From Mobula hypostoma (Eukaryota): 64,000 nt of DNA. Below are positions 889 through 54,405 of this stretch, one piece after another. Where the stretch lies: positions 9,052,001 through 9,116,000 of the forward strand of contig NC_086120.1 of the NCBI RefSeq assembly GCF_963921235.1. The letters run 5' to 3'. The notes under the pieces are model-generated. The model saw only the letters and a program-made list of their open reading frames with translations, did not search any database and was not told where the DNA came from. How positions within the stretch are numbered: the first letter of the stretch is position 1; each line of letters opens with the position of its first letter. The translations under genes were made by a program, and so were the position numbers.

Positions 889-1925
889 CTCCAATCCTTT
901 CATTTCCATGTCTATCTAAAAGCCTCTCAAATGTGAATATCATATCTGCTTCCTTCACCACACCTGGCAGCTCATTCCAGGAACCTCATGTATGGCACCT
1001 TGTCAAAGCCCTCTGAAAATCCAAGTAAAAACATACACTGATTCTCCTTCGTTGATCCTACCTGTTACATCCTCAAAGAATTCCAAAAGAATTTTCTGGC
1101 AAGATTTCCCATTCAGGAAACCATGCTGATTTTAGCCTGTTTTATCATGTGTCTCCAAGTACCCCAAAACCTCACGCTGAAGAATGGAATCTAACACCTT
1201 GCCAACCACCAAATTCAGACTAACTAGCTTCCAATTTCCTGTCTTTTACATCCTTCTTTTCTTTAAGAGTGGAGTGATGTTTGCAGTTTTCCTGTCCTCC
1301 AGAATGATTCTTAAAAGATGACTACTTATGTTTCCACAATCTTTAAGCTACCTCTTTCAGAATCATGGGGTATAGTCCATTTAGTTCAGGTGACTGATCT
1401 ATCAGGTCCAAGTAGGTTATATGAACTCAGCAATCTGTGTTTCCGTTCAAAAGAGCACTGAAGAGATAACATCTGGTATACTGCAAACACTCTTTATATT
1501 CCTTCTGCCATCTGCAAGCCGACCAATCAGCCATTCTGCATTTTCATCCAGTCATTTTCTTTACATTGTAAACAACAGTGGAGCCAGCACTGATCCCTCT
1601 GGAACACCACTGGCCATAGTCCTCCAGTCCGGACTTTACCCTTCCACGACTATCCTCTCTCTTCTACTGCCAACCAATTTTAAAGTCATCATGGATTCCA
1701 AGTGAATTAATCTACTGCATCAGACAACCCTGAAGGAGCTTGACAAAAACCTTCCTAAAATTTACGTGAACAACTCTTACAACCTCACCAATTGCCCTTG
1801 TCATCTCCCGAATGAACTTAGTCTATTCTGTAAGGCACAATCTGCCCTTCACAAAGCCCTTCTGACTATCACTACTAAGCCTATGCTTTTCCAAATGCAA
1901 CTAAATCCAGTGCATAAGATTCTTC
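889..1925 (-). mobile_element. Decayed CR1 fragments
   Basis: Reverse-strand remnants of RT motifs (AAACCATGCTGA = QHGF region; CCACTGGCCATAGT and GGAACACCACT = SGVPQG region). No intact ORF. Confidence 0.65.
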
Positions 1926-1994
1926 TCCAGTAGATTTGCTTCCTCTCTCCTTTCTTCGTTTTTGCTAGATTCAGTACTCTGATATGTGGATCAT

Positions 1995-2340
1995 CTTGTG
2001 AGGGAAGTTGAGGCCTGTATTCACAGGAGTTTTAAAGACTGACAGCTTATTTGATTGGATCATCAGCTCCTGAGTGGTCCTGGCAGGGGGCCAATAAAAA
2101 GGATGTTTCCTCTTATAGGCAATCTAAAACAAAACACTCGTGTTTAAAAATTAGGTTTTGTCCACTTAGGATAGATGTGAAGTTAAGTTCATTTCTCTCT
2201 CAGAGGGCCATAAACCTTTCAAACTCTTGTCCTCAAGGCTCTGTTTACCTGGAACTTGCAGTAATGGGACATAAATTTTACAATAAGATCAGTCATATAG
2301 TTATTGAATGGCAGAGCAGGTTTGAATCTATTTCTTCTCC
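1995..2340 (+). mobile_element. Old CR1 3' end remnant
   Basis: Degenerate CR1 3' sequence (AGGATGTTTCCTC...TTTCTCTCTCAGAGGG...GATTGAATGGCAGAGCAGG); paralogous to about 50560-50970. Confidence 0.55.
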
Positions 2341-2965
2341 TTAATCATTTATTGAGATACAAAGATCAACAAGGTTCGCATCATGCTACTTATTCCAGAA
2401 TAGATCAATTGATCTTCCCTGGAGAGTTCAGTAACTACAACCAACGTCCCTGCTTGGGATTACAAGTTAAGCCTCAGCCACTGTCAGTGCCCCTGATTAC
2501 TGGCTGTTTGAGGAGGGCAGCACCGGGCCAGATGGGTTCACTTGCACTTGTCTGCCCACAATCACTGTCCGGATTCCCACGGAAAGAGGGGTCACTGAGT
2601 CAGAGGGACTGGTTCTTCTGAAGCCCTCAGAGAAAGAAGGAAAATCGGAGCAGACAAAGAATAAAACTGTTTTGTTTAACTTGGGAGGATATGTGAATTG
2701 AGGATATTCACTTTTCCTTTTCAGTGACAATTTCCTTTTCCCAATCGTAAGGGTGGCATTCTTTCATTGAAAGATGTTGATCCAAAGTTTCATCAACGTC
2801 CAGGAACTACTGTAGAATGAGTGAACTATTTCAGAGCATTGAATTTTGACCCGTTCTGGCCAGTGAACAAGTGAATATTTGCTTGATGTGCAACAAACAA
2901 AATTGAGAATGGGATAACTGTATAATGATTCAAATTTACCGTTGTCATACACAGGATATTTAAGA
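2340..2965. repeat. Unclassified block duplicated at about 53634-54405
   Basis: Shared strings such as GATCAATTGATCTTCCC, CAGTAACTACAACCA.CGTCCCTGCTT, CAGAGCATTGAATTTTGACCC and TTTGCTTGATGTGCAACAAAC occur in both places. Confidence 0.85.
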
Positions 2966-3389
2966 TCTTCCTTCGTGAAATACATCTGTACAAGTTTATT
3001 GAAATATACACACAATTCATGAGTTTGTCAATTTCAAATCAAGCATACACTTGTTTTTCTGGTCTTGGCTTGCAAGAATCTGAAGCAAGACCTGGATGGC
3101 AGGTTTGCTCTCCAAGGCAAGCAATTTATTAACTTTACCCACCCATATTTCCACAGATACTTGTGTGAATTGTAATGTAGTCAGTGCAGACAAGGTAGAG
3201 TGGGAGCACTATGAGTTTGCTGGAAGGATCATGAGACTCAAATGTGAATTCCCTAATGGAATGGCCAGTACTGACATCATCTCCCTCATTGCTAATAGTA
3301 AAGTGGGTTTGCTTCCAGCAGCTCCATCCCCTGAGAAATGCACTGCCACCTTTATGATAGAGAGGTGTGCTCACACCACGGTACCCCAT

Positions 3390-3534
3390 TATTTATTTAT
3401 CTATTGAGATACAGCATGGAGTAGCCCTTCCAGCCCTTCGAGCCAAGCTGCACAGCAGTCCACCAATTTAACATATGTTGACACATATACAATGACCAAT
3501 TAACTTAACAACTGATATATCTTTGGACTATGGG
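3390..3534 (-). mobile_element. HE1-like SINE 3' remnant truncated by a CR1 insertion
   Basis: ATTTATTTATCTATTGAGATACAGCATGG...AATGACCAATTAAC...CTTTGGACTATGGGAG resembles the reverse strand of elasmobranch HE1-type SINEs as I recall them. Confidence 0.45.
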
Positions 3535-4113
3535 AGACAATAGACAATAGGTGCAGGAGTAGGCCATTCGGCCCTTCGAGCCAGCATCGCCATTCACTGT
3601 GATCATGGCTGATCAACCACAATCAGTACCCCGTTCCTGCCTTCTCCCCATATCCATTGACTCTGCCATCATTAAGAGCTCTATCTAACTCTTTCTTGAA
3701 AGCATCCAGACAATTGGCCTCCACTATTTTCTGAGGCAGAGCATTCCACAGATCCACAACTCGCCGGGTGAAACAGTTTTTCCTCAACTCCGTTCTAGAT
3801 GGCTACCCCTTATTCTCAAATTGTGGCCTCTGGTTCTGGACTCCCCCAACATCGGGACCATGTTTCCTGACTCTAGCGTGTCCAATCCCTTAATAATCTT
3901 GTATGTTTCAATCAGATCCCCTCTCATCCTTCTAAATTCCAGTGTATACAAGCCCAGTCGCTCCAATCTTTCAACAAATGACAGTCCCGCCATCTCGGGA
4001 ACAAACCTCATGAACCTCCGCTGCACTACCTCAATAGCATGAATGTCCTTCCTCAAATTTGGAGACCAAAACTGTACACAATACTCCAGGTGTGGTCTCA
4101 CCAGGGCCCTGTA

Positions 4114-5643
4114 TGTCACAATGGCAGGGGCATTGGGAGCAAGGGTGGAACCAAATGCAAGACACATCTTGTGAGGTTGCTTAGATTTAGTTTATTGTTC
4201 GATACCAGGAGAGCAAGGCAGGAGCAGGAAATAGGAAACTGGACTAGGACTCAGGACTACAACTAGGCTGGGACTAGGGGTCTGGGCTTGGACTCAGAAT
4301 CAGCTCCCAGAACTGAAGGAGACATCAAGAGGCTAGGGTATGGACTCCGAGCCAGAGACTGGGCAAGGACCAGCCTTGGACAAGGTCCAAGCCTTGGACT
4401 GGGCAAGGTCTTGCCTTGGGCTCGGACTCCAGAACCAGGCAAGGACGTGACATGGGCTAGGGAGAGGAGGAACATGGGAACACAGAGCCTCGGTCTCGGG
4501 AGAGCAGGTACCTGGAACTATGGACACATACACAGAACACAGAGTCGGGACTCCTCCTTGGGTACAGGGCATAGGGCCGGAACTCACACACAGAACAGAG
4601 AGCCGGGAATCCACCTTGGGTACAGGACTCATGACCCTCCGCAGGGCAACAGCAAGATGGCCTGACTTACCCCACGGAGGCGAGGACAAGACAAGACAGA
4701 ACATGACCCCCCACGGGGCAACGGCAAGATGGCCTGACTTACCCCAGGGAGGCAAGGACAAGACAAGACAAGACATGACTCCTCATGGGGCAATGGCAAG
4801 ACTGCCAGACTTACCCCCACGGAGGCAAGAACCAGACAAGACAAGACATGACCCCCCGTGGATCAATGGCAAGATGGCCTGACTTACCCCATGGATGCGA
4901 GGACAAGACAAGACAAGATGAACACGAATGAACACCAGACTGTACCTATCTAGCTCTGGTGATAGAACTAGACCGAAGTGCAGCCGGGGTCTGCAGACGA
5001 GGGCTAGAGGTGAGAGGGGCAGAGAAGGGATTCAGACAAAGGGGTAGGACAGGAATCACAGACCACCAGGGTCAGGACTTGACTCAGAACTGGGAAGCTG
5101 CCAGGGACAGGACTTGACTTGGTGCTTGAATGCAGCCAGGACCAGGGCTTGACTTGGTGCTTGAATGCCGCTGGAGACAGGACTTGACTTGGAACTTGAA
5201 TGCCACTGGAGCCAGGACTTAACTTGGAGCCTCCGGGTAGTGGCGAGCTCTCGACTTGGCCTGGGAACAGTAGACAGCGGTTCTTGATTCCCTCCATCGG
5301 GTTAACTGACGAACCCACCTCGGTGAGGAAACTTTGCAGGCTCGCTTTGGCAAGGTAACTGGACAGGGTTGCTCCGGTGAGGAGAGGCGAATTACCGGTA
5401 CTCGCTTCGGCAGAGACTAGGCTTGCTCCGGCCAGATGACATCAGCACACCATACCCTGGATGATTTTGCAGATGCTCATGCACCGATCGGCTGAAAGCC
5501 GGAAACTATAAACTACTGGTTCAGCCGAGCGTTAATTGCCTCTAATCACCAAAGTCGAGGGACACGGGAAGACAGGGAATCAATGGTCCGGATCGTAACA
5601 TAAACAAGCTAAATTTAAAGGGACCCCGATCCGGACCATGACA
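4114..5643 (-). mobile_element. Solo LTR (1530 bp) inserted in CR1 RT
   Basis: Ends TGTCA...TGACA. Perfect 5-bp TSD CTGTA at 4109-4113 and 5644-5648 restores the CR1 sequence GGGCCCTGTACAACTGC. AATAAA on the minus strand near 4190. Confidence 0.85.
4630..4918. repeat. Tandem array, 4 x ~72 bp, inside the solo LTR
   Basis: Units start with CATGAC at 4630, 4702, 4774 and 4847; each contains GGCAAGATGGCCTGACTTACCCC and GACAAGACAAGAC. Confidence 0.9.
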
Positions 5644-8446
5644 CTGTACAACTGCAGAAGGACCTCTTTGTTCCTATACTCAACTCCCCTTGTTATGAAG
5701 GCCAACACGCCATTAGTTTTCTTCACTGCCTACTGTACCTGCATGTTTACTTTCAGTGACTGACGAACAAGGACACCTGGATCTCATTGTATTTCCCCTT
5801 TTCCTAACTTGACACCATTCAAATAGTAATCTGCCTTCCTGTTCTTGCCACCAAAGTGTATAACCTCACATTTATCCACATTAAACTGCATCTGCCATGC
5901 ATCTGCCCACTCAACCAATCTTTCCAAGTCATCCTGCATTATCTCAATATCCTCCGCACAATTCACACTGCCACCCAGCTTTGTGTCATCTGCAAATTTG
6001 CTAATGTTATTTTAATCCTTCCATCTAAATCATTAATGTATATTGTAAATAGCTGCGGTCCCAGCACCGAGCCTTGCGGTACCCCGCTAGTCAACTCCTG
6101 CCATTCTGAAAGGGACCCATTAATCCCTACTCTTTGTTTCCTGTCTGCCAACCAATTTTCTATCCATGTCAACACCCTACCCCCAATACCATGTGCTCTA
6201 ATTTTGCCCACTAATCTCCTATGTGGGACCTTATCAAAGACTTTCTGAATGTCAAGATACACTACATCCACTGGCTCACCCTTGCCCATTTTCACAGTTA
6301 CATCCTCAAAAAATTCCAGAAAATTAGTCAAGCATCATTTCCCCTTCATAAATCCATGCTGACTCAGACTGATCCTGTTACTGCTATCCAAATGTGCCGC
6401 TATTTCATCCTTTATAATTGACTTCAGCATCTTCCCCACCACTGATGTTAGGCTAACTGGTCTATAATTCCCTGATTTCTCTCTCTCTCCTTTCTTAAAA
6501 AGTGGGATAGCATTAGCGACCCTCCAGTCCTCAGGAACTGATCCTGAATCTACAGAACATTGGAAAATAATTACCAATGCGTCCACAATTTCTGGAGCCA
6601 CCTCCTTAAGTACCCTGGGGTGCAGACCATCAGACCCTAGGGATTCATCAGCCTTCAGTCCCATCAGTCTATCCAACACCATTTTCTGCCTAATGTGAAT
6701 CTCCTCCAGTTCCTCCGTTACCCTAGGTCCTCTGGCCACTATTACATCTGGGAGATTGTTTGTGTCTTCCCTAGTGAAGACTGATCCAAAGTACCTGTTC
6801 AACTCATCTGCCATTTCCTTGTTACCCATAATTAATTCACCCGTTTCTGTCTTCAAGGGCCCAACTTTGGTCTTAACTAATTTTTTTTCCTCTTCACATA
6901 CGTAAAGAAGCTTTTACTATCCTCCTTTAGGCAAGCTTGCCTTCGTATCTCATCTTTTCTCCCCGTATTGCCTTTTCAGTTATCCTCTGTCTCTCTTTAA
7001 AAGTTTCCCAATCCTCTGGCTTCCTGCTGATCTTTGCTATGTTATACTTCTCCTTTATTTTTATACTATCCTTGATTTCCCTTGTCAACCATGGTCGCCC
7101 CTTACTCCCCTTAGAATCTTTCTTCCCCTTTGGAATGAACTGATCCTGCACCTTCTGTATTATTCCCAGAAATACCTGCCATTGTTGTTCCACTGTCGTC
7201 CCTGCTAGGGTACCTTTCCAGTCAACTTTTGCCAGCTCCTCCCTCATGGCTCCATAGTCCCCTTTGTTCAACTGCAATATTGATACTTCCGATTTTCCCT
7301 TCTCCCTCTCAAATTGTAGTTTAAAACTTATCATATTGCAGTCACTACCTCCTAATGGCTCCTTTACCTCGAGTTCCCTTATGAAATCCGGTTCATTACA
7401 CAAAGCTAAATCCAGAATTGCCTTCTCCCTAGTAGGCTCCAGTACAAGCTGCACTAATATCCATCTCGGAGGCACTCCACAAACTCCCTTTCTTGGGGTC
7501 CAGTGCCAACCTGATTTTCCCAGTCTACCTGCATGTTAAAATTCCCCATACCTTTGCAACATGCCAATTTTAATTCTTGATTCAACTTGCACCCTAAATC
7601 CAGGCTACTGTCTGGGGGCCTGTAGATAACTCCCATTAGGGTGTTTTTGCCCTTACAATTTCTCAGTTCTATCCATACTGACTCTACATCTCCTGATTCT
7701 ATGTCGCCCCTCGCAAGGGACTGAATTTCATTCCTCAGCAGCAGAGCCACCCCACCCCCTCTGCCTATCTGTCTGTCCTTTTGATAGGACGTATATCCCT
7801 GAATACTCATTTCCCAGCCCTGGTCCTCTTGCAGCCATGTCTCTGTTATTCCTACAACATCATACTTGCCAATTTCCAACTGAGCCTCAAGCTCATCCAC
7901 TTTATTTCTTACACTTCATGCATTCATATATAATTCTTTTAATCCATTACTCCTCTCACCTTTCACATTGATTCTTATTGCACTTGGCCATACTCTCCGA
8001 TCCTTTCCTGAGCTCTCTGCCCCGTTAATTCTGTTGTCTTTCATAACTTCCCTTATTCTCTCTTTCCATTTAACTTCATCCTTATACTTCCTCTCCTTCC
8101 CCCACCCCACTACTTAGTTTAAACACACCCGTGTGGCTGTGGCAAACCTGCCTGCCAGAATGATGGGCCCCCTCCTGTTAGGGTGCAACCCGTCCCTTTT
8201 TTACAATTCATTCTTGCCCCAAAACAGATCCCAGTGGTCTAAGAATCTAAATCCCTGCTTCCCGCACCAGCTCCTCAGCCACACATTCAGATCCCTTATC
8301 TCGCTGTTCCTGCCCTCACCAGCATGAGGAACTGGAAGCAAACCAGAGATAACCACCCTGCTGGTCCTACTTTTCAGCCTTCTTCCGAGTTCTCTGAAGT
8401 CACGCAGCAGAATTTCTTTCCTCCTCTTCCCAACGTCATTTGGTTC

Positions 8447-10172
8447 TGTCTTCACTAAGGAGGACATAAATAATCTTCCAGAAATAGTAAGGGACAGAGG
8501 GTCCAGTGAGATGGAGGAACTGAGTGAAATACATGTTAGTAGGGAAGTGGTGTTAGGTAAATTGAAGGGATTGAAGGCAGATAAATCCCCAGGGCCAGAT
8601 GGTCTGCATCCTAGAGTGCTTAAGGAAGTAGCCCAAGAAATAGTGGATGCATTAGTGATAATTTTTCAAAACTCGTTAGATTCTGGACTAGTTCCTGAGG
8701 ATTGGAGGGTGGCTAATGTAACCCCACTTTTTAAAAAAGGAGGGAGAGAGAAACCGGGGAATTATAGACCGGTTAGCCTAACGTCGGTGGTGGGGAAACT
8801 GCTGGAGTCAGTTATCAAGGATGTGATAACAGCACATTTGGAAAGCGGTGAAATGATCGGACAAAGTCAGCATGGATTTGTGAAAGGAAAATCATGTCTG
8901 ACGAATCTCATAGAATTTTTTGAGGATGTAACTAGTCGAGTGGATAGGGGAGAACCAGTGGATGTGGTATATTTGGATTTTCAAAAGGCTTTTGACAAGG
9001 TCCCACACAGGAGATTAGTGTGCAAACTTAAAGCACACGGTATTGGGGGTAAGGTATTGGTGTGGGTGGAGAATTGGTTAGCAGACAGGAAGCAAAGAGT
9101 GGGAATAAACGGGACCTTTTCAGAATGGCAGGCGGTGACTAGTGGGGTACCGCAAGGCTCAGTGCTGGGACCCCAGTTGTTTACAATATATATTAATGAC
9201 TTGGATGAGGGAATTAAATGCAGCATCTCCAAGTTTGAGGATGACACGAAGCTGGGTGGCAGTGTTAGCAGTGAGGAGGATGCTAAGAGGATGCAGGGTG
9301 ACTTGGATAGGTTGGGTGAGTGGGCAAACTCATGGCAGATGCAATTTAATGTGGATAAATGTGAAGTTATCCACTTTGGTGGCAAAAATAGGAAAACAGA
9401 TTATTATCTGAATGGTGGCCGATTAGGAAAAGGGGAGGTGCAACGAGACCTGGGTGTCATTATACACCAGTCATTGAAAGTGGGCATGCAGGTACAGCAG
9501 GCGGTGAAAAAGGCGAATGGTATGCTGGCATTTATAGCGAGAGGATTCGAGTACAGGAGCAGGGAGGTACTACTGCAGTTGTACAAGGCCTTGGTGAGAC
9601 CACACCTGGAGTATTGTGTGCAGTTTTGGTCCCCTAATCTGAGGAAAGACATCTTTGCCATAGAGGGAGTACAAAGAAGGTTCATAAGATTGATTCCTGG
9701 GATGGCAGAACTTTCATATGAAGAAAGACTGGTTGAACTGGGCTTGTACTCGTTGGAATTTAGAAGATTGAGGGGGGATCTGATTGAAACGTATAAGATC
9801 CTAAAGGGATTGGACAGGCTAGATGCAGGAAGATTGTTCCCGATGTTGGGGAAGTCCAGAACGAGGGGTTACAGTCTGAGGATAGAGGGGAAGCCTTTTA
9901 GGACCGAGATTAGGAAAAACTTCTTCACACAGAGAGTGGTGAATCTGTGGAATTCTCTGCCACAGCAAACTGTTGAGGCCAGTTCATTGGCTATGTTTAA
10001 GATGGAGTTAGATATGGCCCTTGTGGCTACAGGGGTCAGGGGGTATGGAGGGAAGGCTGGGGCGGGGTTCTGAGTTGGATGATCAGCCATGATCATAATA
10101 AATGGCGGTGCAGGCTCGAAGGGCCGAATGGCCTACTCCTGCACCTATTTTCTATGTTTCTATGTTTCTATA
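8447..10172 (+). mobile_element. Young 5'-truncated CR1 LINE
   Basis: Uninterrupted RT frame, 3' UTR ending GAAGGGCCGAATGGCCTACTCCTGCACC and a (TTCTATGT)n tail at 10149-10172. Confidence 0.93.
8511..10073 (+). CDS. CR1 ORF2 reverse transcriptase domain (520 aa, N-terminally truncated)
   Basis: [65 protein letters not shown] (FADD variant), RPHLEYCVQFWSP. Confidence 0.9.
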   Translation: MEELSEIHVSREVVLGKLKGLKADKSPGPDGLHPRVLKEVAQEIVDALVIIFQNSLDSGLVPEDWRVANVTPLFKKGGREKPGNYRPVSLTSVVGKLLESVIKDVITAHLESGEMIGQSQHGFVKGKSCLTNLIEFFEDVTSRVDRGEPVDVVYLDFQKAFDKVPHRRLVCKLKAHGIGGKVLVWVENWLADRKQRVGINGTFSEWQAVTSGVPQGSVLGPQLFTIYINDLDEGIKCSISKFEDDTKLGGSVSSEEDAKRMQGDLDRLGEWANSWQMQFNVDKCEVIHFGGKNRKTDYYLNGGRLGKGEVQRDLGVIIHQSLKVGMQVQQAVKKANGMLAFIARGFEYRSREVLLQLYKALVRPHLEYCVQFWSPNLRKDIFAIEGVQRRFIRLIPGMAELSYEERLVELGLYSLEFRRLRGDLIETYKILKGLDRLDAGRLFPMLGKSRTRGYSLRIEGKPFRTEIRKNFFTQRVVNLWNSLPQQTVEASSLAMFKMELDMALVATGVRGYGGKAGAGF

Positions 10173-10785
10173 CACTACCACTTCTGGCTGCTCACCTTCA
10201 CCCTTGAGGATGCCCTGCAATCGGTCTGTGACGTCCTGGATCCTGGCACCAGGGAGGCAACACACCATCCTTAAATCCTGCCTGTTGCCGCAGAAACCCC
10301 GTTCTGTACCTCTCACAATGGAGTCCCCTACTACCATGGCTCTGCCTGATGTCTGTCTCCTCAGCTTTGCTTCAGCGCCAATTTTTGACTTGCAGACCTG
10401 TCCGCCTCTCAGACTGGCAGTGTCTTCTGTCCCGACAGCTTCCAAAAAGGTGAACCTGTTTTCAAGAGGGCGGAGGGAGAAGCACCCAGAGGAAACCCAG
10501 GCGGTCACAGGGAGAACGTGCAAACTCCAAACAGGCAGCATCAGAAACTGAAACCCCGGTGCCTGCATTTCCAATGCTATCAGATTTTTTATTCAGTGTG
10601 CAGCTGTTCCTTCAACATTATTATGAATCATGTTTACATGAGTTCTTGATATAATCCCAGACTCAGTTTGCTCTAAAGATCTGTCCAGACTCAGCCCTGA
10701 ATCTACTCAATGATTCAGCTTCTCTTGTTTTTTGGATCCATCTTTGCCAGATTTTTAAAAATGTACAGATGTACACAGATCCACA

Positions 10786-11470
10786 GAACCTGACCAGCTA
10801 CATCCAAAATCACTGTGGGCGGCTACTGAAGAAATTAGAAACCATTGTTCAGGTATTTGCTTCATCGTTAGCCATGGAGAAGTGCTAGTAAATAGACTGG
10901 ATGGTAGCAAATGTTGTGCATATATTTAAGAAGAGTGGCAAGGAATAATGGGATCTATACACTAGTAAGTCTTACATCTGGGGCAGGTAAATGACTGGAG
11001 AAGATTCTACTGGATAAGATATCCCTACACCTTGAAATGCAGGGGTTGGTTAGAAGCATCAGCATGGCTTTGTGCATGGGAAATCATGTCTTATGAATTT
11101 TACTGAGATTTTTTGATGATGCAATAAAGAATGTCAGTGAGGGCAAAGCCATGGTGTCATTTACATGAACTTCAGTAAGTATTTAACATTCCACTTATTA
11201 AGCTGTTTTGGAAGGATATTTCACATGGAATCCAGTAAGAGCTGGCTAACTAGAGACACAATTGGCTTGATGGGAAAAAGGGGAAGTGCAAACAAAGTGG
11301 AGGATAGTGTCTCAGTCTGGTTGCCCATGATTAGTGGTGTGACTCGGGTGATGGTGCAGGGCCCATTGTTGTTTGTCATCTATGTCAACAATTTGAATAA
11401 GTACATACAAGACATGACTAATAAGTTTGCAGTTGACAGTAAAATAGGTGGTATAGTAGACAATGAAGAA
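10786..11470 (+). mobile_element. Old decayed CR1 RT fragment (first copy of a local duplication)
   Basis: Degenerate QHGF, MNFSK and [10 protein letters not shown] motifs; 10786-11264 is repeated at 12681-13159. Confidence 0.7.
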
Positions 11471-12680
11471 ACATAGAGTTCTTTGAGGAGGTGACCAGGC
11501 ATATAGATGAGAGTAGCGCAGTGGATGTGATCTATATGGATTTTAGTAAGGCATTTGACAAGGTTCCACATGATTGGCTTATTCAGAAAGTCAGAAGGCA
11601 TGGGATCCAGGGAAGTTTGGCCCGGTGGATTCAGAATTGGCTTCCCTGCAGGAGGCAGAGTGTCGTGGTGGAGGGAGTACATTCAGATTGGAGGACTGTT
11701 ACTTGTGGTGTCCTACAAGGATCTGTTCTGGGACCTCTACTTTTCGTGTTTTTTATTAACGACCTGGATGTTGGGGTAGAAGGATGGCTTGGCAAGTTTG
11801 CAGATGACACAAAGGTTGGTGGTGTTGTAGATAATGTAGAGGATTGTCGAAGATTGCAGAGAGATATTGATAGGATGCAGAAATGGGCTGAGAAGTGGCA
11901 GATGGAGTTCAACCCGGAGAAGTGTGAGGTGGTACACTTTGGAAGGACAAAATCCAAGGCAGAGTACAAAGTAAATGGCAGGATACTTGGTAGTGTGGAG
12001 GAGCAGAGGGATCTGGGGGTACATGTCCACAAATCCCTGAAAGTTGTCCCACAGGTAGATAGGGTAGTTAAGAAATCTTATGGGGTGATATCTTTCATAA
12101 GTCGAGGGATAGTGTTTAAGAGTCGCGATATAATGATGCAGCTCTATAAAACTCTGGTTAGGCCACACTTGGAGTACTGTGTCCAGTTCTGGTTGCCTCA
12201 CTATAGGAAGGATGTGGAAGCATTGGAAAGGGTACAGAGTAGATTTCCCAGGATGCTGCCTGGTTTAGAAAGTATGCATTATGATCAGAGATTAAGGGAA
12301 CTAGGGCTTTACTCTTTTGAGAGGGAGGATGAGAGGAGACATGATAGAGGTGTACAAGATAATAAGAGGAATAGATAGAGTGGACAGCCAGTGCATCTTC
12401 CCCAGGGCACCACTGCTCAATACAAGAGGACATGGCTTTAAGGTAAGGGGTGGGAAGTTCAAGGGGGATATTAGAGGAAGGTTTTTTACTCAGAGAGTGG
12501 TTGGTGCGTGGAATGCACTGCCTGAGTCAGTGGTGGAGGCAGATACACTCATGAAGTTTAAGAGACTAATAGACAGGCATATGGAGGAGTTTAAGTTGCG
12601 GGGTTATATCGGAGGCAGGGTTTGTGGGTCAGCACAATATTGTGGGCCGAAGGGCCTGTAATGTGCTGTACTGTTCTATG
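11471..12680 (+). mobile_element. 5'-truncated CR1 LINE (RT plus 3' end)
   Basis: ORF 11491..12378 ([34 protein letters not shown]), a frameshift into 12317..12661, and a 3' tail CTGTTCTATG. Confidence 0.9.
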
Positions 12681-14050
12681 GAACCTGACTAGCTACATAT
12701 AAGAACACTGTGGGCGGCTACAGAAGAAATTAGGAACTATTGTTCAGATATTTGCTTCATTGTTAGCCATGGAGAAGTGCTAGTAAATAGACTGGATTGT
12801 AGCAAATGTTGTGCATATATGTAAGAAGAGTGGCAAGGAATACTGGGATCTATACACCAGTAAGTCTTACATCTGGGACAGGTAAATGACTGGAGAAGAT
12901 ACTAAGGGATAAAATATCCCTACACCTTGAAACGCAGGGGTTGGTTAGAGGCATCAGCATGGCTTTGTGCATGGGAGATCATGCCTTATGAATTTTACTG
13001 AGATTTTTTAATGATGCAATAAAGGATGTCAGTGAGGCCAAGGCCATGGTGTCATTTATATGAACTTCACTAAGTCTTTAATGTTCCACTTATTAGGCTG
13101 CCCTGGAAAGATAGTTCACAGGCAATCCAGTAAGAGCTGGCTAACTGGAAACACAATTGATATAGTAGACAATGAAGAAGATCAATCAAAATTACAGAGG
13201 CAGCTTGATCAGCTGGGATGAAGGATGTCAAATGGAGTTTAATTTGGATAAGTGCAAGACATTACATTTTCAAGATTAAATCAAGGTAGGAATTTCACAT
13301 GAATGAGGGGTGTTGGTGAACAGAGGAACGTTGGAGTGAAAGTACAAGGTTTGAAAGTGGAGTCACAGGTAGACAAGATGGGAAAGAAGGTTTTTGGCAT
13401 TATGAACTTCATAAGTCAGGACACTGAATATAAAAGTTGGAAGCCATGGTGTGTTTGTAGAGAATGCTACTGTGGTCGTACGTGGAGTATTGTGCAAAAT
13501 TTTGGCTGCACTGCTATAGGAAAGATCCATTTAAATAGTAAAGACTGCAGAAAAGATTGACAGGTTGTGAGATCTTGAGGGTCTGTGTTATGGGCAGAAA
13601 TTAGTCAGGGGAGAACTGAGAGGTGATTATATAGAAGTGTACATGATCATGAAAGGTGAATGTACTCGGCTCTTTTTCCATATTGAATTAAGAACAAGAA
13701 TATACGAGTTTAAGGTGAGAGGGAACACCTTGCACAACATTGCTGAGGCTCATCACCAATGATGCTGAGACAGCCTACGGACTGGAGGTGGAAGAGTTCG
13801 AGGCCTGCTGCCAGGCAAATAACCTGTTTAACTCACAAACTGTGGCATCTATGTGAAATGAGCTAACAGAGGAAGGGTAGGTTGAGAAATGTACAAGAAC
13901 AACTTTTAACAGATAGTTGGACAGGTACATGGTTTGGAAATGTTCAGAATGTTAGGGGCCAAACACTGGCAAATGGGACTAACTTGGATGGAGATGCCGA
14001 TCAATATGGACCAATTGGGGCAAAGAGGTTAGTACTGTGCAGTAGAACTC
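12681..14050 (+). mobile_element. Old decayed CR1 (duplicate of 10786-11264, then RT C-terminus and 3' end) containing a short Rex-type insert at 13731-13830
   Basis: Direct repeat of the 10786 block, then degenerate RT and 3' UTR (GGGCCAAACACTGGCAAATGGGACTAACTTGG). Confidence 0.7.
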
Positions 14051-14640
14051 TATGAAACTTATTTATTCAGGATAGCTCATCCCTTCCATTTGATACTTTC
14101 CATTGGCAGGACCCAATGGCATCTTTCTCCCATGGGTGATTCCATTTACCAGATACTGAAGTCACCATATACACAGCATGGTTACAATAGAACTCAGGCA
14201 TCCCTCTTCAACTTTTTTGATACCATTGACAAATGCATCAGTACTGTATTCTGATTTCATGCAGAACTTATCAATGTCATCATCTTTGCCACATACTTCC
14301 TCACTGCCATTAAATGATAATAGTATCTGTTATCATCAACAGCATTCCTGGTGAAGGAAATTAATTTTGGAGGTCAGACACTGATATAATATTTTCTGAG
14401 TTACACATCCTTTCTCCTGGAAGCCACTGCAATATCATTCTGTGGCAAGAAACTAAGTCGAGGCACTGCAGTCTCCTCGTTTGCTTTTCAATGAGAACAG
14501 ATTATTTCAAACGTTACCATTTGCACTGAATTCTTCTAATATTGTGTTTGCGTCCATTTATTTGGGGCGTGACAGTCATGTTTTGTTGCTCAGCCTGTGA
14601 TCTTAAATTATCTGCGTGAGTGATCTTCTAAACAGAATTA

Positions 14641-16892: not shown

Positions 16893-16900
16893 TAATTTTG

Positions 16901-16916: not shown

Positions 16917-17021
16917 ATGTTCCGATTTTGAGTTTAAGTGCTGGTAATTGCCATTTTGATTTGAAAAGGGAATACCCGATTTATTTTGGTTTCATTGGTG
17001 TGTGTGTTGTATTCGGCAACA

Positions 17022-44893: not shown

Positions 44894-44939
44894 ATGCGGA
44901 CGCTGTGCTTTTTCTGGTCTCTGGCAGTGTGGCTGGGCT
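44894..44939 (+). CDS. IGL: Ig light chain exon 1: signal peptide MRTLCFFWSLAVWLG
   Basis: 46-nt hydrophobic leader, phase-1 donor GTAAGT at 44940, 86-nt intron to the acceptor TTTTTCACAG ending at 45025; standard split Ig leader. Confidence 0.92.
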
Positions 44940-45025
44940 GTAAGTACAGGCAGTGGTTGCTGAGGTGGGTCTTGGGGTCACATTAAAGAGTCAATAGTTA
45001 AAGTTGAATTCCTGATTTTTCACAG

Positions 45026-45385
45026 CTGGAGAGTCCCAGACTCTGACTCAGCCTCCGACCGTGTCGCTGAGTCCAGGAGCCACGGCCACGCTGAGTTGTG
45101 ACATCGGATCAAAGGCTAGCTATGTTGTTGGTTGGTACAAGCAGACACCGGGAACAGTTCCACAATGGATCCTGTACTACCATCAATCGCACAGCGCCCC
45201 GACCTACGGCCCTGGGTTTAGCAGCGACCGTTTCACGTCGACATCCAACAGCGCCGGCACCGTTTACCAGTTGATCATAAAAAACGTGGAGACGAATGAC
45301 GCTGCCGTCTATTACTGCGCAACGTGGTTTTCATCGGGCAGTAGCTACGGGGTGTTCGGCCCAGGGACCAAGCTCTTTGTTACAG
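45026..45385 (+). CDS. IGL: Ig light chain exon 2: pre-joined V-J, sigma-like
   Basis: (S)GES-QTLTQPPTVSLSPGATATLSC-DIGSKASYV-VGWYKQTPGTVPQWILYYHQSHSAPTYGPGFSSDRFTST...DAAVYYC-ATWFSSGSSYGV-FGPGTKLFVT, then donor G|GTAAGT at 45386. Both Cys, the Trp and FGxG are present; no heptamer/nonamer between V and J. Confidence 0.95.
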
Positions 45386-45968
45386 GTAAGTGCCCGATAA
45401 ATCTCTCCTGCGGTGACCACGGCATAAATACGGTCACCCTCAATTAAGAAGTTATAAGTTATAATTTTCTAGCGAATTTTACAATGAAAATGTTGATTTA
45501 CAATCTAATCCTGTTCGTGTCCAGCGTCAGTTTTACTCGATAGAGTTGGGCTCGGTGAACTGTTTCTGTATTTTAATGAAGCATTTCTCTTTTCGATTGT
45601 ATTTTCGGACAAACCATGATTCTTACAAACTTTCTGTTCAGTTGTGTTACTTCTGCTCTAGTTTTAGTTTGTCTGTTTTTGTGTTGGTTTAATTGGAACG
45701 AACGTGAAGGGATCTATCTTCCTTAAGTGGGGCCAAAGTTGTCAGTGGGGACAAGGCATTGCCGGCCGTAGACAGCCCACAGTTGGCAACGCAGTAGAAC
45801 GACAAGTTTCAAGTTATTAATTCGAATTTTCCAGCGAAACGTCCTACCCTCCCAGTGAGGGTGGAACTCTCCTCCAGCAGCCATCCCTTAAAAGACCCTC
45901 TCCCACTGCCCAGTCCTTGCCTTCTCTCTCCTTTCACCGATTCACGTGAGAGCTGCTCCTTCCTTGGA

Positions 45969-46388
45969 ACACACATAAAAGTTGCTGGTGAATGCAGCAG
46001 GCCGGGCAGCATCTGTAGGAAGAGGTACAGTCGCCTTTTCGGGCCGAGACCCTTCGTCAGGACTAACTGACCCTTCGTCAGGACTAACTGAAAGAAGAGC
46101 TAGTAAGAGATTTGAAAGTGGGAGGGGGAGGGAGAGATCCGAAATGATAGGAGAAGACAGGAGGGGGAGGGATGAAGCCAAGAGCTGGACAGTTGATGGG
46201 CAAAAGGGATATGAGAGGTTCCCATGGGACAGGAGGCCCAGAGAGAAGGAAAAGTGGGAGGGGGGGGAAGGCCCAGAGGATGGGCAAGGGTATAGTGAGG
46301 GACAGAGAGTGAAAAAGGAGAGAGAGAAAGAATGTGTGTATATAAATAAATAACAGATGGGGTACGAGGAGGAGGTGGGGCATTAGGA
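45969..46388 (-). mobile_element. Penelope-like 3' terminus in the J-C intron, with a mutated hammerhead (46029-46064) and a 21-bp tandem duplication (46050-46091)
   Basis: Minus strand AGUC-CUGACGA-AGGGUCUCGGCCC-GAAA-AGGC-GACU; purine-rich body on the + strand mirrors the pyrimidine tract of the 25.3-26.1 kb relic. Confidence 0.75.
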
Positions 46389-46732
46389 ACCTGTTGGTCC
46401 TGGCTTTTATGCTGAGGTACTGTTTCCCGGATGGTAGCAGCTGGAACAGTTTGTGGTTGGGTTGACTTGGGACCCTGGTGATCCTTCGACCCCTTTTTAT
46501 ACACCTGTCTTTATAAATGTCCCGCAGAGTGGGAAGTTCACATCTGCAGATGTGCTGGGCTGTCCGCACCACTCTCTGCAGAGTCCTGCAATTGAGGAAA
46601 GTACAGTTCCCTACCAGGCAGTGATGCGGCCAGTCGGGAAGCTCTCAAATGTGCCCCTGTAGAAAGTTCCAAGGATTTGGGGTGGGGGGGGGGCATACCA
46701 AACTTCTTCAACCGCATGAGGTGAAAGAGGCG
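46389..46732 (-). mobile_element. Rex1/Babar-type RT C-terminal fragment in the J-C intron
   Basis: ORF 46084..46572 begins VRTAQHICRCELP...HKLFQLLPSGKQYLSIKARTNR. Confidence 0.75.
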
Positions 46733-46734
46733 GT

Positions 46735-46860
46735 GTTGTTAGAATTCTTTGAGGAAATAACAAGCAGAATAGACAAAGGAGAATTGGTGAATGTTGTGTA
46801 CTTGAATTTTAAAATGGCCTTTGACAATGTGCTGCACATCAGGCTACTTAACGAGATAAG
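46735..46860 (+). mobile_element. Short CR1 RT fragment in the J-C intron
   Basis: LLEFFEEITSRIDKGELVNVVYLNFKMAFDNVLH. Confidence 0.75.
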
Positions 46861-47414
46861 TACTGCTCATCGATCCCGGTCACTACACCGACTGTGGCCG
46901 GTGCTCCGACTCTGCGGAGAATCCAGCCTCCCGCCCCCATGTGAGTGGGAGCCGAATCGTTCGACATTATCACAGATCACAGAGCGGTCTACATTGACCC
47001 GCTCCATGGAGCTCAGGACCGCGCATTTAGTGCCCTCGCCCACTGGGGCAGAGCAGATTGTAACATATATATTCTCATTAATGATGGGTGGGAGGGCCGG
47101 AGGGAAGAGGAGGAATGTGTCACTGATGGCATCGAGAGTGGGCACATTAAACTATTCTGGGGCGCTTTGATGCCAGTGTGTCTCTCAACTGCGGGAATGA
47201 CTCAGAGACTAACAGCCTCACCGGTTGCAGTAGATTTCTAGTTTTTCCGTGTTGACCTTCATGCACCGTCCTCCATCGGCACCGTCTTGACCCTTGGTGA
47301 GAGTCTGGGCTCAACTCAATGAAGTTGAAACATTTTAATCACGCTGTGTCAAACTGTGAAATGATGAGAGCTCTTCTACGACTTGAAACACGTTTTCTCT
47401 TGTTCCCGTTGCAG

Positions 47415-47737
47415 ATCGGCAGCTCCCAGACCCGTCAGTGGAACTACTTGGGCCGTCAGCCGAGGAGATCTCCGCTAAAGGATCGGGCACCTTAGTTTGC
47501 CTGGTCAGTAAATTGTCGATCGGCTTCCCTGTCGTCAGCTGGACAGTGAACGACAGTCCGACGAGCAGTGAGGTGCAAACCAGCGGGGTGACTCAGAACG
47601 CGGACAAAACCTTCAGTCTCAGCAGCTACCTGACGGTGCCCGGCGCAGACTGGAGCAGTGGGAAGAGGTACTCCTGCTCAGTTCAACAAGGAGCAGCCTC
47701 GACAATATCCGCAACAGTCACACAGTCCAGCTGTTAA
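47415..47737 (+). CDS. IGL: Ig light chain exon 3: constant domain (C1-set), sigma-like
   Basis: Acceptor TTTTCTCTTGTTCCCGTTGCAG ending at 47414, phase 1: (D)RQLPDPSVELLGPSAEEI...TLVCLV...VSW...TFSLSSYLTVP..DW..GKRYSCSV...QSSC*. The terminal Cys fits the H-L disulfide. The three exons total 729 nt = 242 aa plus stop. Confidence 0.95.
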
Positions 47738-48082: not shown

Positions 48083-48764
48083 TATGATCAGTGCAGGAAC
48101 GATCCCTGTGTGTGCGTTTCGTCATCTCTCGTGTTATTTTTCCCAATTCTGGCACTGAGTGGAAGGAGATTCAACTCTCGGCTCTGGTTCGTGACCTGGC
48201 TTGGTGAAGTTTGGGAAATCCGTACGGCAGCCTTGGTCACCGAATATCAGCAAAGAAGGGAAGAAAGTTCCATTGCTGAGAATCGGGGACAGGGTGGTGG
48301 GTTGACTGTAAGGCTGCGATGTAAAACTAGAACGAAACAGTTGGTTTTGGGAAGGGTTAATACAGGAAATGAACATAATCGTGGCTGCAAATTTCCAGGC
48401 TCCTGGGCAGCATTGGTGGAAAGAGGAATAAATTGTATTTACGTTCTGAGCTAATGAGGTTTCGCCAGAAGTGACCAATATTGACACAAACTGGAAAGTC
48501 TGGCTATCTGAAATGGTTGGGTCACAAGGGATGAAGATTGCCCAGTCAGAAGTTTAAACCCCATTAGTGCCCCTCAGTTCTCAAACATGCCGTCAAGTCC
48601 TGGTAACACTAAAATCAATAGATATCATGAGGAAAATATATCAGTTATTTGAATCATATCTCACCTGAACAAGGTGTTGTGGTTATTGTACATCAAACAT
48701 CGCAGTCCCAGGATATCAATGCAGCATTTCCTGATGCTGTTCATCCCACCTGCTGCTTCATCAA

Positions 48765-50240
48765 TAACCATAGGAGACAGACTCGTTGAATTAGATCACT
48801 TGGCCCATCGAGTCTGTCCTGCCATTGTTGATTAATTATCCTTCTCAACGCCATTTGCCTGTCTTCTCCCTGTACACTTCCATGCACTTACACATCAAGA
48901 AGCTATCAATCTCTGCTTTAAATATACCCGTTGACATGGACTCCACAGTGTCTTGAGTAATGAATTTCACATGTTCACCTCTCTCTGGCTAAATAAATTC
49001 CTCAACTCTGTTTTAAAGTGACATCCTTGTAATCTGAGGCTCTGCCCTCTGGTCCTAGATTCTCCCTCTATTGGAAACATCCTCTTCACGTCCACTCTAC
49101 TCGGCTTTTCAATATTCAACAGGTTTCAATGGGATTACAACACCCCCCCACCCCTATTCCTCAAAACTCCAGCAAGTACAGGTCCAGACCCATGAAACTC
49201 AACACGTATGTTAACCCTTTCATTCCAGAGATCACTCTCATGAACCTTCTCTCCAATGACAGCATATAAAATTCCAGATAAGGGACCCCAAACTGCTCAC
49301 AATATTCCTCATGCAGTATGACCAATGCCTTATAAAGCCCCAGCATTACAACCTATAACTTTATCTTTTGTGATTCCTGCTCTAAGACCCCCAGGTCTCT
49401 TTGCATGTTTAATTTCTGAAATTGTTCCCCATTAAGAAAATAGTCCACAGAAGTGTATGACCACATACATCCCTAAACTGTATTCCATCTGTCACTTCTT
49501 TGCCAATTTTCCTAATCTGTCCAAGTCCTTCTCCATACTATCTGCATCCTCAACACCAGCTGCTCCTCCACCTACGTTTGTATCATCCACAAACTTGGCT
49601 GTAAAACTATCAATTTCATCATCTAAATTATTGACATATAACGTGAGAAGATGTGGTCCCAACACTGACTCCTGTGGAACACCACTAGTCAACAGCAGCC
49701 AACCACTAAAGGTCCCCTTTATTCTCCCTTTTTGTTGCCTGCCAGTCAACCAATCTACTGTCCACGCTTGTATCTGTCCTGTAATACTATGGGATCTTAT
49801 CTTGTTTATCAGCCTCATGTGTGGCACCTTCTGAAAATCCAAGTGAAGAACCTACCCTTACTCTCTTTTGTCCATCCTACCTGCTATTTCCTCAAAGAAT
49901 TCAAACAGATTTCACAGGCATGATTTCCCTTTTGGGAAACCATGCTGACTTTGGTCTATTTAATCAAGTGTCTCCAAGTACCCAAAATTCATATTTAATA
50001 ATGGACTGTAACATCTTCCCAACCTCTAAAGTCAGATTAACTGGCCTACAATTTCCTGTTTTTTGCATCCTGCCTTTCTTAAGGAGTGGAGTAACATTTG
50101 TAATTTTCCGGTCTTCCAAAACCATTACATTTCTAATGATTCTTGAAGGATCACTACTAATGCCTCAACTCAATGATCTTCTCAACTACCTCCTTCAGAA
50201 ACCTGGGTTGTAGTCCATCTGGTCCAGGTGTCTTATCATT
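48765..50240 (-). mobile_element. Decayed CR1 LINE 3' half
   Basis: ORFs 49492..49842 and 49161..49346 (MDFQKVPH, SGVPQESVLGP, KFVDDTNVGG, LYKALV). Confidence 0.8.
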
Positions 50241-50344
50241 CAAGTCCAGGTAGCTTATTTGAATACGGTACTCTGTGTTTCTGTTGAAAGGGGTACTGGT
50301 GAGATCTCATCCGCTGTACTGAAAATACTCTTCGCAGTTTCTTT

Positions 50345-53400: not shown

Positions 53401-53633
53401 ATGGGAAAATATACCAGATTTATCCAATCGCTCCTTATCTCACCTGTCCTCAACTTTATGCAGCATCCTGGTAAACCTCTTCTGTACCCTCTCTAAAGCC
53501 TCCCCATCCTTCCCATATTGGGATGACCAGAACTGAATGCAATAAATAGGGCAATGGATTCAAGGGAGATGTATGTCATTGATGACAGCCATAAATGAGT
53601 GGATAGACTTACATAACAAAATATGTCTATGCA

Positions 53634-54405
53634 ATAATCATTCAATGAGATGTACAGACCAATCAGGTCCGTGTCATGCTACCTTTCCAAAATGGATCAA
53701 TTGATCTTCCCCGGAGATTGCAGTAACTACAACCAGCGTCCCTGCTTCAGATTACAAGTTAAAGCTCAGCCAGCAGGTCCACATTCCTGCTCTCTGTCAG
53801 TGACCCTGATTGCTGGCTGTGTGAGGAGGGCAAGACTGGGCCAAATGGGTTCACTTGCTCTTGTCTGCCAGACTCACTGTCTGGATTCCCATGGGAAGAG
53901 GGGTCACTGGGTCAGTGAGTCTGATGCTCCTGATGCTCTCAGAGAAAGTGCGAAAATTGGAGCACAAAAAGATTAAAGATTCGGGCAGAGGTGGAAAATC
54001 CCCTTATTCTATTCAACTACTTCCTGATGGCATTTATTAGAATTAACAGCTAATCCTGGGCTTGTCTGAAAAATGACAGTGTTGATGCCAGGTTTTGGAA
54101 ACCATAGCGTATCCATGTTCATAGATGAAATGTTGGACCAAAACAAGGACACCGGTAAAGGGCAGCCACACTTCCTGTTCCCAACACCAAGGATAGAATT
54201 CTTTCACTGAGAGCATTTGATCTCGTTTGATCAACATCCAAGAAGTAATGTCGATGCATGAACTTGTTCAGAGCATTGAATTTTGACCCATTCTTGGCAT
54301 TGCACTCGTGAAGGTTTGCTTGATGTGCAACAAACACAGCTCAGAACGGGATAACTGTATAATAACCCATATTTACCATGGGCACTCACAGGATATTTCA
54401 GGATA
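53634..54405. repeat. Unclassified block, paralog of 2340-2965
   Basis: Same shared strings as the 2340-2965 block; this copy has extra sequence at about 54000-54190. Confidence 0.85.

What the first reader, a model, noticed from the sequence alone, without database searches (positions are those of the whole stretch)
985..14620. Old segmental duplication of the Ig gene's 3' flank predicts a sister cluster just upstream of the window
Seen: colinear homology, including non-TE junctions, between 985-1495 and 49812-50335, 1960-2345 and 50522-50970, 2340-2965 and 53634-54405, 13160-14050 and 54505-56745, and 14055-14620 and 56745-56852 plus 58420-59085. Both copies have the same old CR1 interrupted by a Rex-type insert at the same point (GAGGGAACACCT at about 13730 and 55710), which independent insertions would not produce. 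Copy-specific younger insertions interrupt each copy: CR1s at 3535-10475 and 11471-12680; CR1 at 54618-55208 and LTR at 56853-58419. In the second copy the C exon ends about 2.1 kb before the homology starts. Inference: the repeat unit is about 49 kb and probably includes the Ig gene, so another IgL cluster should lie a few kb 5' of position 1.
Basis: partly seen in the sequence, partly recalled or inferred. Interest (0 to 1): 0.7.

Follow-up and report, generated by a model that had tools for sequence, protein, structure and literature searches.

The report
Old duplicated flank of ray antibody gene
A stretch of DNA behind a devil-ray antibody light-chain gene has an old, diverged second copy about 45 kb upstream; this is the ordinary way shark and ray antibody gene clusters multiply, and I could not check whether a second antibody gene lies in front of that copy.

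Summary
Window 1947-14628 and 50510-59088 form one same-strand, colinear chain of nine blocks. Together they give 2,444 aligned nt at 77.8% identity (K2P 0.27). Both copies carry the same old CR1 LINE, broken at the same base by a Rex1-like LINE. Each copy has its own later insertions, and the other copy shows the empty site. This is a real, old segmental duplication of the 3' flank of the window's germline-joined sigma light-chain gene. That gene is identical to Mobula hypostoma XP_062888106.1.

Three corrections:
- The leftmost block (984-1494 / 49813-50332) is a high-copy CR1 fragment, no closer than family level. Between it and block 2 the copies differ, so firm homology starts 2.8 kb behind the C exon.
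- Homology stops at 14628/59088, and nothing beyond supports a regular 49-kb tandem unit.
- Contigs from public runs show further copies of the B flank, about 90% alike, in this species and a relative. The flank is therefore a low-copy family, not a two-copy feature.

The predicted sister cluster just upstream could not be tested, because no sequence left of position 1 was obtainable. Weak hints speak against an intact annotated gene there: the nearest noted gene lies 74 kb upstream and has the consecutive RefSeq accession number. The scan noted the same pattern 428 kb upstream. This is an ordinary feature of cluster-type immunoglobulin loci.

The parts
44894..47737 (+). Germline-joined sigma-type IgL gene. 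Leader 44894-44939, V-J exon 45026-45385, C exon 47415-47737 including the stop.
   Evidence: The spliced translation is identical to P0048 = XP_062888106.1 of Mobula hypostoma. It is the only Ig exon set in the window by tblastn.
984..1494 (-). Block 1 of copy A: RT fragment of an old minus-strand CR1-like LINE. It continues as LINE sequence to about 1929. Its paralogy with 49813-50332 is ambiguous.
   Evidence: 73.5% identical to B1, but 71% to the unrelated copy at 22535-22867. The matching stretch in B has summed contig depth of 35,000-130,000.
1947..2964 (+). Blocks 2-4 of copy A: a low-copy segment without TE hallmarks, paired with 50510-50932 plus 53635-54401.
   Evidence: 74-84% identity. 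Sharp shared boundaries at 1947/50510 and 2964/54401, with no terminal inverted or direct repeats.
2965..10785 (.). Material specific to copy A: 2965-3535 unassigned; LINEs at 3540-4167(-), 5645-7900(-) and 8439-10155(+); a tandem repeat at 4288-4918.
   Evidence: ORFs with RVT_1. B has no counterpart between 54401 and 54400.
10786..11470 (+). Old plus-strand CR1 in A, 5' part. Only 11301-11423 has a B counterpart (54400-54522). The stretch is repeated at 12681-13178.
   Evidence: The two copies are 91% identical to each other.
11471..12680 (+). Young CR1 private to copy A.
   Evidence: 295-aa RVT_1 ORF. Absent from B between 54522 and 54520.
13162..13730 (+). Old plus-strand CR1 in A, up to the shared junction. 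Paired with 54520-54617 plus 55210-55711.
13731..13826 (+). Rex1-like LINE fragment nested in the old CR1 of copy A. About 700 nt have been deleted relative to B (55712-56515).
   Evidence: Junction at the same base in both copies. The 12-mer occurs only at 13719 and 55700.
13827..14156 (+). The old CR1 resumes to its 3' end in A. Paired with 56516-56852.
   Evidence: 76.9%.
14157..14628 (+). Flank behind the old CR1 in A. Paired with 58420-58470 and 58687-59088. Homology ends here.
   Evidence: An integrase (rve) ORF starts at 14641.
48760..50332 (-). Old minus-strand CR1 between the C exon and copy B. It contains block 1 of B (49813-50332).
   Evidence: Minus-strand RT and C-terminal ORFs. 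RVT_1 match. High contig depth.
50340..50509 (-). High-copy SINE-like piece private to the B lineage.
   Evidence: It does not align with A 1495-1946. The 50400-50599 bin has depth about 20,000. ARAGORN finds no tRNA here, so 'SINE-like' is my reading.
50510..50966 (+). Block 2 of copy B.
50967..53640 (.). 2.7-kb insertion of the B lineage, flanked by TAA(T/G)TCATT. The ~90% paralogues share it.
   Evidence: Single site in A. Contigs 7-11% different cross both junctions.
53641..54401 (+). Blocks 3-4 of copy B.
54400..54617 (+). Old plus-strand CR1 in B (blocks 5 and 5b). It abuts block 4 directly, so the CR1 5' part kept in A (10786-11300) is missing here.
54618..55209 (+). Young CR1 private to copy B.
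   Evidence: Empty site in A. Summed depth 0.4-2 million.
55210..56852 (+). The old CR1 continues (55210-55711), then the nested Rex1-like insert (55712-56515), then the CR1 3' end (56516-56852).
56853..58419 (.). It is related to 4630-4843 in A's private region.
   Evidence: Its LTR nature was not verified.
58420..59088 (+). Flank behind the old CR1 in B. Last block; homology ends here.

Best explanation
Window 1947-14628 (A) and 50510-59088 (B) are two descendants of one composite DNA segment. That segment held a low-copy stretch, an old CR1 LINE already carrying a nested Rex1-like LINE, and about 0.5 kb of flank.

Shown: the segment was copied within the sigma light-chain multi-cluster locus of the devil ray Mobula hypostoma, long before this species split from its sequenced relative. 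B sits 2.8 kb behind the C exon of an intact germline-joined sigma gene. After the copying, each copy took up its own LINE, SINE and LTR insertions and suffered deletions, so about 2.4 kb aligned at 78% identity now spans 12.7 kb in A and 8.6 kb in B.

Shown: the B type of the flank was copied again later.

Inferred: the mechanism is the ordinary birth-and-death duplication of whole V-J-C clusters with their flanks, which builds cluster-type Ig loci in cartilaginous fish. On this reading A is the 3' flank of an older cluster copy whose Ig gene is either just left of the window, decayed or deleted. I put about 40% on a recognisable Ig gene or relic within about 15 kb upstream. The confidence given here is for the segmental-duplication core, not for the upstream gene.
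For: - Colinear same-strand chain with E-values of 1e-18 to 1e-92.
- 2,444 nt at 77.8% identity, K2P 0.265, and similar in TE-derived and non-TE blocks.
- An identical CR1|Rex1 junction to the base, at a 12-mer found only at these two sites.
- Clean filled-versus-empty sites for the private insertions.
- No TIR or LTR at the edges of the low-copy part.
- Contig depth of the low-copy blocks is 76-430 summed, against 5-13 for the window's own exact contigs. Common LINEs reach 35,000 to 2,000,000. The blocks are therefore not a dispersed high-copy TE.
- Contigs 7-11% different, with 4-8 times the own depth, cover 50393-54222 and cross the B-lineage junctions. They appear in this species and in a relative about 3-5% diverged.
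- The gene beside B is a real annotated sigma IgL.
- Other sigma genes lie 74 kb upstream and 20 kb beyond the window's end.
- Duplication of V, J and C as a unit is the accepted origin of cluster loci (PMC2193156, Fig. 1 legend; PMC4279169).
Against: - Nothing shows that copy A ever had an Ig gene. The firm left edge of homology (1947/50510) is sharp, and the sequences to its left differ between the copies.
- Block 1 is only family-level similar.
- Homology also ends sharply on the right, so the copied piece could have been the flank alone.
- The ~90% paralogues look nearly identical to one another: 600-840-nt contigs at 4-8 times the own depth. The annotated sigma V regions, by contrast, differ by 11-31% in protein. 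These paralogues may therefore not all sit beside sigma genes.
- The tool itself warns that contig depth is not a copy number.
Confidence: 0.8

Rival explanations
1. A tandem repeat unit of about 49 kb contains the Ig gene, so an intact or recognisable sister sigma cluster lies a few kb to the left of position 1.
For: - A lies in the same orientation, 30 kb in front of the window's V exon. B lies about 25 kb in front of the next noted V-J, 20,230 nt beyond the window's end. The layout flank-gap-gene therefore repeats.
- The 119-kb gap between the gene at -74 kb and the window's gene is about twice the other spacings in the locus.
- The left edge of A runs into later LINE insertions and the window's end, so it is open.
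Against: - There is no homology between 14629-49000 and 59089-64000 apart from common LINEs.
- Block offsets vary from 41 to 51 kb.
- The scan has no note within about 29 kb upstream, although 'near' look-ups do cross window borders.
- The -74 kb gene and the window's gene have consecutive RefSeq protein accessions, XP_062888105 and XP_062888106. This hints that no annotated coding gene lies between them, but it rests on my assumption that numbering follows position.
- At K2P 0.27 an old copy has had ample time to die.
Confidence: 0.35
2. The shared blocks belong to a low-copy composite repeat. This could be a segmental-duplication family or an unusual large mobile element, and it spreads independently of Ig genes. 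Its presence behind the Ig gene would then be incidental, and A would predict nothing about Ig genes.
For: - Sharp shared boundaries at 1947/50510 and 2964/54401.
- Additional copies at about 90% identity that are nearly identical to one another, in two species. This pattern is typical of recently active elements.
- A looks like an internally shorter version of B.
Against: - No terminal inverted repeats, LTRs or coding capacity.
- The internal 2.7 kb of B has its own target-site duplication, so it is a later insertion and not the core of an element.
- The ~90% copies also carry the B-lineage SINE-like piece to the left of the boundary (50393-50509). A transposing unit that ended at 50510 would not carry it.
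- Two copies of a rare family within 50 kb, in the same orientation and each next to the same CR1/Rex1 nest, cannot be independent insertions.
Confidence: 0.15
3. Copy A is the displaced 3' flank of the sigma gene 74 kb upstream, pushed away by about 70 kb of later insertions. That gene's exons would have been kept similar to the window's gene by gene conversion.
For: The C regions of the sigma paralogues are 94-99% identical in protein, while V regions are 69-89% identical and the A/B flank is only 78% identical in DNA. This pattern is compatible with homogenisation of the C exons.
Against: In B the flank starts 2.8 kb behind the C exon. A 70-kb expansion would be far beyond any private insertion seen here, the largest being about 8 kb. 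I have no direct data.
Confidence: 0.05

Closest known systems
Multiple-cluster (V-J-C) organisation of cartilaginous-fish light-chain loci, built by duplicating whole clusters (Lee et al. 2000, PMC2193156; review PMC4279169)
   Same: One V-J-C gene per cluster, many clusters tens of kb apart on one chromosome, and germline-joined V-J. The duplicated non-coding flank behind the C exon is what such unit duplications should leave.
   Different: Only the flank copy is seen here. The Ig gene of the older copy is not in the window. The A/B pair is much more diverged (78% DNA identity) than the coding regions of the annotated paralogues (C regions 94-99% protein identity).
Old segmental duplications dated by shared versus private transposon insertions (the general comparative-genomics method)
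   Same: A shared nested CR1/Rex1 junction predates the duplication. Private CR1, LTR and SINE inserts with empty sites in the other copy postdate it.
   Different: Nothing unusual. It is the textbook pattern.
The scan's own note s1-144877 ('Old segmental duplication with ~57-kb offset predicts another IgL cluster just upstream', 428 kb upstream in the same locus)
   Same: The same kind of observation and the same inference, in the same sigma locus.
   Different: That stretch was not available to me, so I could not compare sequences.

Membership tests
Paralogous copies from a segmental duplication | Several blocks in the same order and orientation, with significant similarity | tested here: met
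   Ten blocks with E-values of 1e-18 to 1e-92. Blocks 2-8 give 2,444 nt at 77.8% identity.
Paralogous copies from a segmental duplication | Shared pre-duplication TE junctions at identical bases | tested here: met
   The CR1|Rex1 junction is at 13730/13731 in A and 55711/55712 in B. The 12-mer at the junction is unique to these two sites.
Paralogous copies from a segmental duplication | Private post-duplication insertions with an empty site in the other copy | tested here: met
   Young CR1 at 54618-55209, the 2.7-kb insert with its target duplication, the insert at 56853-58419, and the A-specific LINEs.
Cluster-unit duplication of an IgL locus (each copy = V-J-C gene plus flank) | Each flank copy sits behind a V-J-C gene or its relic | not testable with these tools
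   Copy B does: the C exon ends at 47737. For A the sequence left of position 1 could not be fetched: the assembly file is too large, and ORFs near the window's start are not in the collection.
Cluster-unit duplication of an IgL locus (each copy = V-J-C gene plus flank) | Homology continues across the whole unit (regular period) | tested here: not met
   Homology ends at 14628/59088. Only common LINEs match beyond that point. Offsets vary from 41 to 51 kb.
Dispersed transposable-element family (composite repeat) | High copy number across the genome | tested here: not met
   Blocks 2-5 have summed contig depth of 76-430, against 35,000 to 2,000,000 for the LINE parts. Block 1 alone behaves as a high-copy LINE. 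Caveat: the contig depth threshold is 80% identity, so very old families would be missed.
Dispersed transposable-element family (composite repeat) | Terminal repeats, target-site duplication or coding capacity at the unit's ends | tested here: not met
   No TIR or LTR at 50510/54401 or 1947/2964. No TE-like ORF in 50510-54401.

The most novel reading that the evidence does not exclude
Copy A is the orphaned flank of a sigma cluster that died or was deleted, and it has not been homogenised. The surviving clusters keep their C exons, and perhaps their 3' flanks, alike by gene conversion. In support, C regions are 94-99% identical in protein, and the B-type flank copies are about 90% like B and nearly identical to one another. 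If so, A would give a rare time-stamp showing that the ray sigma locus is several times older than its coding similarity suggests. The A/B divergence is about 5-8 times the divergence between the two sequenced devil rays.
Probability: 0.2. Interest if true: 0.4.

Novelty: already known. Interest (0 to 1): 0.2.

Why it matters
The finding documents, at base resolution, one old duplication step in the sigma light-chain locus of a devil ray. It also supplies a set of shared and private transposon insertions that can order events in the locus. It gives a cheap prediction, an Ig gene or relic just left of the window, that anyone with the assembly can check in minutes. Nothing here changes what is known about how cluster-type antibody loci grow.

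Tried and rejected
- **Upstream DNA via the look-up of encoding contigs.** I tried the annotated sigma proteins P0001, P0002 and P0027. No DNA or coordinates came back for this assembly because the file is too large. One look-up, for P0048, was not sent.
- **Exact look-up of ORFs near the window's start.** Six ORFs from 1-3400 were looked up to reach contigs that overlap the start. None is in the collection.
- **Placing paralogues by sequence.** The search of earlier findings by sequence with P0002 returned nothing.
- **Extending the homology.** More sensitive BLAST found no extension to the right, between 59000-64000 and 1-49000. To the left, 880-1000 matches only generic CR1 tails and not B 48700-49100.
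- **Transposon hallmarks of blocks 2-4.** I looked for terminal inverted repeats, LTRs and ORFs and found none.
- **Other scans.** Rfam found nothing in the window. ARAGORN found nothing, so the SINE-like piece at 50340-50509 is not a recognisable tRNA.
- **Literature.** There is no paper on Mobula Ig loci.
- **Haplotig or assembly artefact.** Rejected: 78% identity and different private insertions exclude it.
- **RefSeq accession order.** I treat it only as a weak hint, because the other sigma proteins' numbers do not fit the positions of the noted clusters in any obvious way.


Full report
**What the window is.** The window has one immunoglobulin gene, with its leader at 44894-44939, a germline-joined V-J exon at 45026-45385 and a C exon at 47415-47737. 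Its spliced product is identical to P0048 = XP_062888106.1, annotated as 'immunoglobulin lambda-1 light chain-like' in Mobula hypostoma. Its nearest named relatives are shark sigma light chains. A tblastn search with both exons finds no other Ig exon or relic anywhere in the 64 kb. Most of the rest is transposon sequence:
- LINE ORFs with RVT_1 and endonuclease domains.
- An LTR element at 16005-21783, whose LTRs are 93.5% identical.
- An integrase ORF at 14641.

**Check of the observation.** Self-BLAST gives one same-strand colinear chain between 984-14628 (A) and 49813-59088 (B), made of ten blocks with E-values of 1e-18 to 1e-92. Blocks 2-8 sum to 2,444 aligned nt at 77.8% identity (K2P 0.265). 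Values are similar for the TE-derived blocks and the others.

The 12-mer GAGGGAACACCT occurs only at 13719 and 55700. In both copies the sequence changes there, at the same base, from the 3' ORF of an old plus-strand CR1 to the middle of a Rex1-like reverse transcriptase. The CR1 then resumes further on, at about 13827 in A and 56516 in B.

Private insertions show clean filled-versus-empty sites:
- The young CR1 at 54618-55209 interrupts TTTGGATAA|GTGCAAG, which is contiguous in A.
- The 2.7 kb at about 50967-53640 is flanked by TAA(T/G)TCATT, which is present once in A.
- The insert at 56853-58419 is also private to B.
- In A, the LINEs at 3535-10475 and 11471-12680 are private.

There are private deletions too. 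A lacks about 700 nt of the Rex1 insert. B lacks the CR1 5' part that A keeps at 10786-11300.

**Corrections to the observation.**
1. Block 1 (984-1494 / 49813-50332) is an RT fragment of an old minus-strand CR1.
   - A1 to B1 is 73.5% identical, but an unrelated copy at 22535 is 71-74% identical to both. The stretch is high-copy in reads-derived contigs.
   - The 452 nt in A and 177 nt in B between blocks 1 and 2 do not align. A continues as CR1, while B has a high-copy, SINE-like piece.
   - Firm homology therefore starts at 1947/50510, which is 2.8 kb behind the C exon. Position and orientation still make a common origin of block 1 more likely than not, by my rough estimate.
2. Between block 1 and the young CR1 at 3-888 lies a 94-nt minus-strand CR1 tail (890-983). 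It does not match B 48700-49100. The left edge is thus open rather than demonstrably continuing.
3. Homology ends at 14628/59088. The remaining 4.9 kb of B matches nothing in 1-49000 apart from common LINEs.

**Is it a dispersed composite repeat?** I laid Logan contigs on 49800-55799 at 80% likeness or more. They came from three runs of one sample of organism A (the coded label of the runs that hold the stretch) and one run of a relative.
- The window's own exact contigs have word depth 5-13.
- Summed depth over blocks 2-5 and the 2.7-kb insert is 76-430.
- By contrast, summed depth is 35,000-130,000 over block 1, about 95,000 over a small repeat at 53460-53513, and 0.4-2 million over the young CR1.
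- The tool warns that contig depth is not a copy number, so I use it only as an order of magnitude. On that basis the non-LINE blocks are low-copy, not a dispersed TE.

Table 8 of that call also shows contigs 7-11% different from the window, with 4-8 times the own depth. They cover 50393-50995, 50966-51684, 52352-52984, 53068-53899 and 53797-54222, so they cross both junctions of the 2.7-kb insert and include the SINE-like piece. The relative species shows two classes of contig: orthologue-like ones (3-5% different, low depth) and the higher-depth class about 10% different.

The B-type flank therefore has further, closer paralogues that arose after the A/B split, and the flank is a small multi-copy family. 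I could not find out where those copies lie. Blocks 2-4 have no terminal repeats, target duplication or ORF.

**What it most likely is.** It is an old segmental duplication inside the sigma light-chain multi-cluster locus.
- Scan notes, which are leads and not evidence, place sigma genes or relics at about -919, -742, -635, -330, -251, -201 and -74 kb, and at 20 kb beyond the window's end.
- The gene at -74.4 kb has the same length (2,478 nt) as the gene of P0001 = XP_062888105.1.
- Duplication of V, J and C together is the accepted origin of such loci (PMC2193156; PMC4279169).
- The A/B divergence (22% raw) is about 5-8 times the 3-5% seen between the two rays' contigs, so the event long predates their split.
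- It is also far greater than the coding divergence among annotated paralogues, whose C regions are 94-99% identical in protein, apart from one at 80%. Either A descends from a much older step than most extant clusters, or the C exons are homogenised.

**The prediction.** I could not read sequence to the left of position 1. The indirect evidence is mixed.
- For a sister cluster: the layout flank, then 25-30 kb, then gene repeats twice (A to the window's gene, and B to the next noted V-J). The 119-kb gap between the -74 kb gene and the window's gene is about double the other spacings.
- Against an intact gene: no scan note lies within about 29 kb upstream, although such look-ups do cross window borders. 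The two flanking genes also have consecutive RefSeq protein accessions, which is a weak hint.
- I put about 40% on a recognisable Ig gene or relic within 15 kb upstream, and less on an intact one.

**Verdict.** The segmental-duplication reading is supported. The 49-kb unit is not supported, and the sister cluster is untested. This is a known kind of feature in a known kind of locus, and the scan has already noted the same pattern 428 kb upstream (s1-144877). Interest is low.

Noticed in passing
window 10786-13178: The young CR1 at 11471-12680 is flanked by a long direct duplication of old-CR1 sequence: 10786-11470 and 12681-13178, 91% identical. The second copy lacks about 205 nt. This is far too long for a normal target-site duplication. 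It may be a local tandem duplication with the LINE at its joint, or an unusual LINE integration.
   Followed up: partly
window 44894-47737, versus P0001, P0002, P0004, P0017, P0049 and P0027: Among the annotated M. hypostoma sigma paralogues, the C regions are 94-99% identical in protein to the window's gene (one is 80%). The V-J regions are only 69-89% identical. The leader's first 24 residues align identically (17 of 24) in each paralogue where it aligns. The pattern fits diversifying V regions together with conserved or homogenised C exons.
   Followed up: partly
window 16005-21783: An LTR retrotransposon with 870-nt LTRs at 16005-16891 and 20910-21783, 93.5% identical. It has gag-like, integrase zinc-finger and RT ORFs. 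A separate integrase (rve) fragment at 14641-15273 begins exactly where the A/B homology ends.
   Followed up: partly
window 40592-43600: A nearly full-length CR1-like LINE, with endonuclease and RT ORFs of 241, 404 and 149 aa. It lies only about 1.3 kb upstream of the Ig leader exon, in the same orientation.
   Followed up: no
window 5645-6790 and 8439-9585: Two LINE copies in inverted orientation, 79% identical over 1.15 kb, lie inside the A-specific region. The plus-strand copy keeps a 520-aa open RT ORF (8511-10073).
   Followed up: no
window 53460-53513: A roughly 55-nt island of very high contig depth (about 95,000 summed) lies inside the otherwise low-copy 2.7-kb insert. Hundreds of contigs diverge on both sides of it. 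It is probably a fragment of an abundant short element.
   Followed up: no
window 4288-4918 and 57392-58109: Related tandem-repeat-bearing sequences (about 72-145-nt units, proline- and serine-rich when translated) occur in the private parts of both copies, in opposite orientation. They are probably independent insertions of one element family.
   Followed up: no
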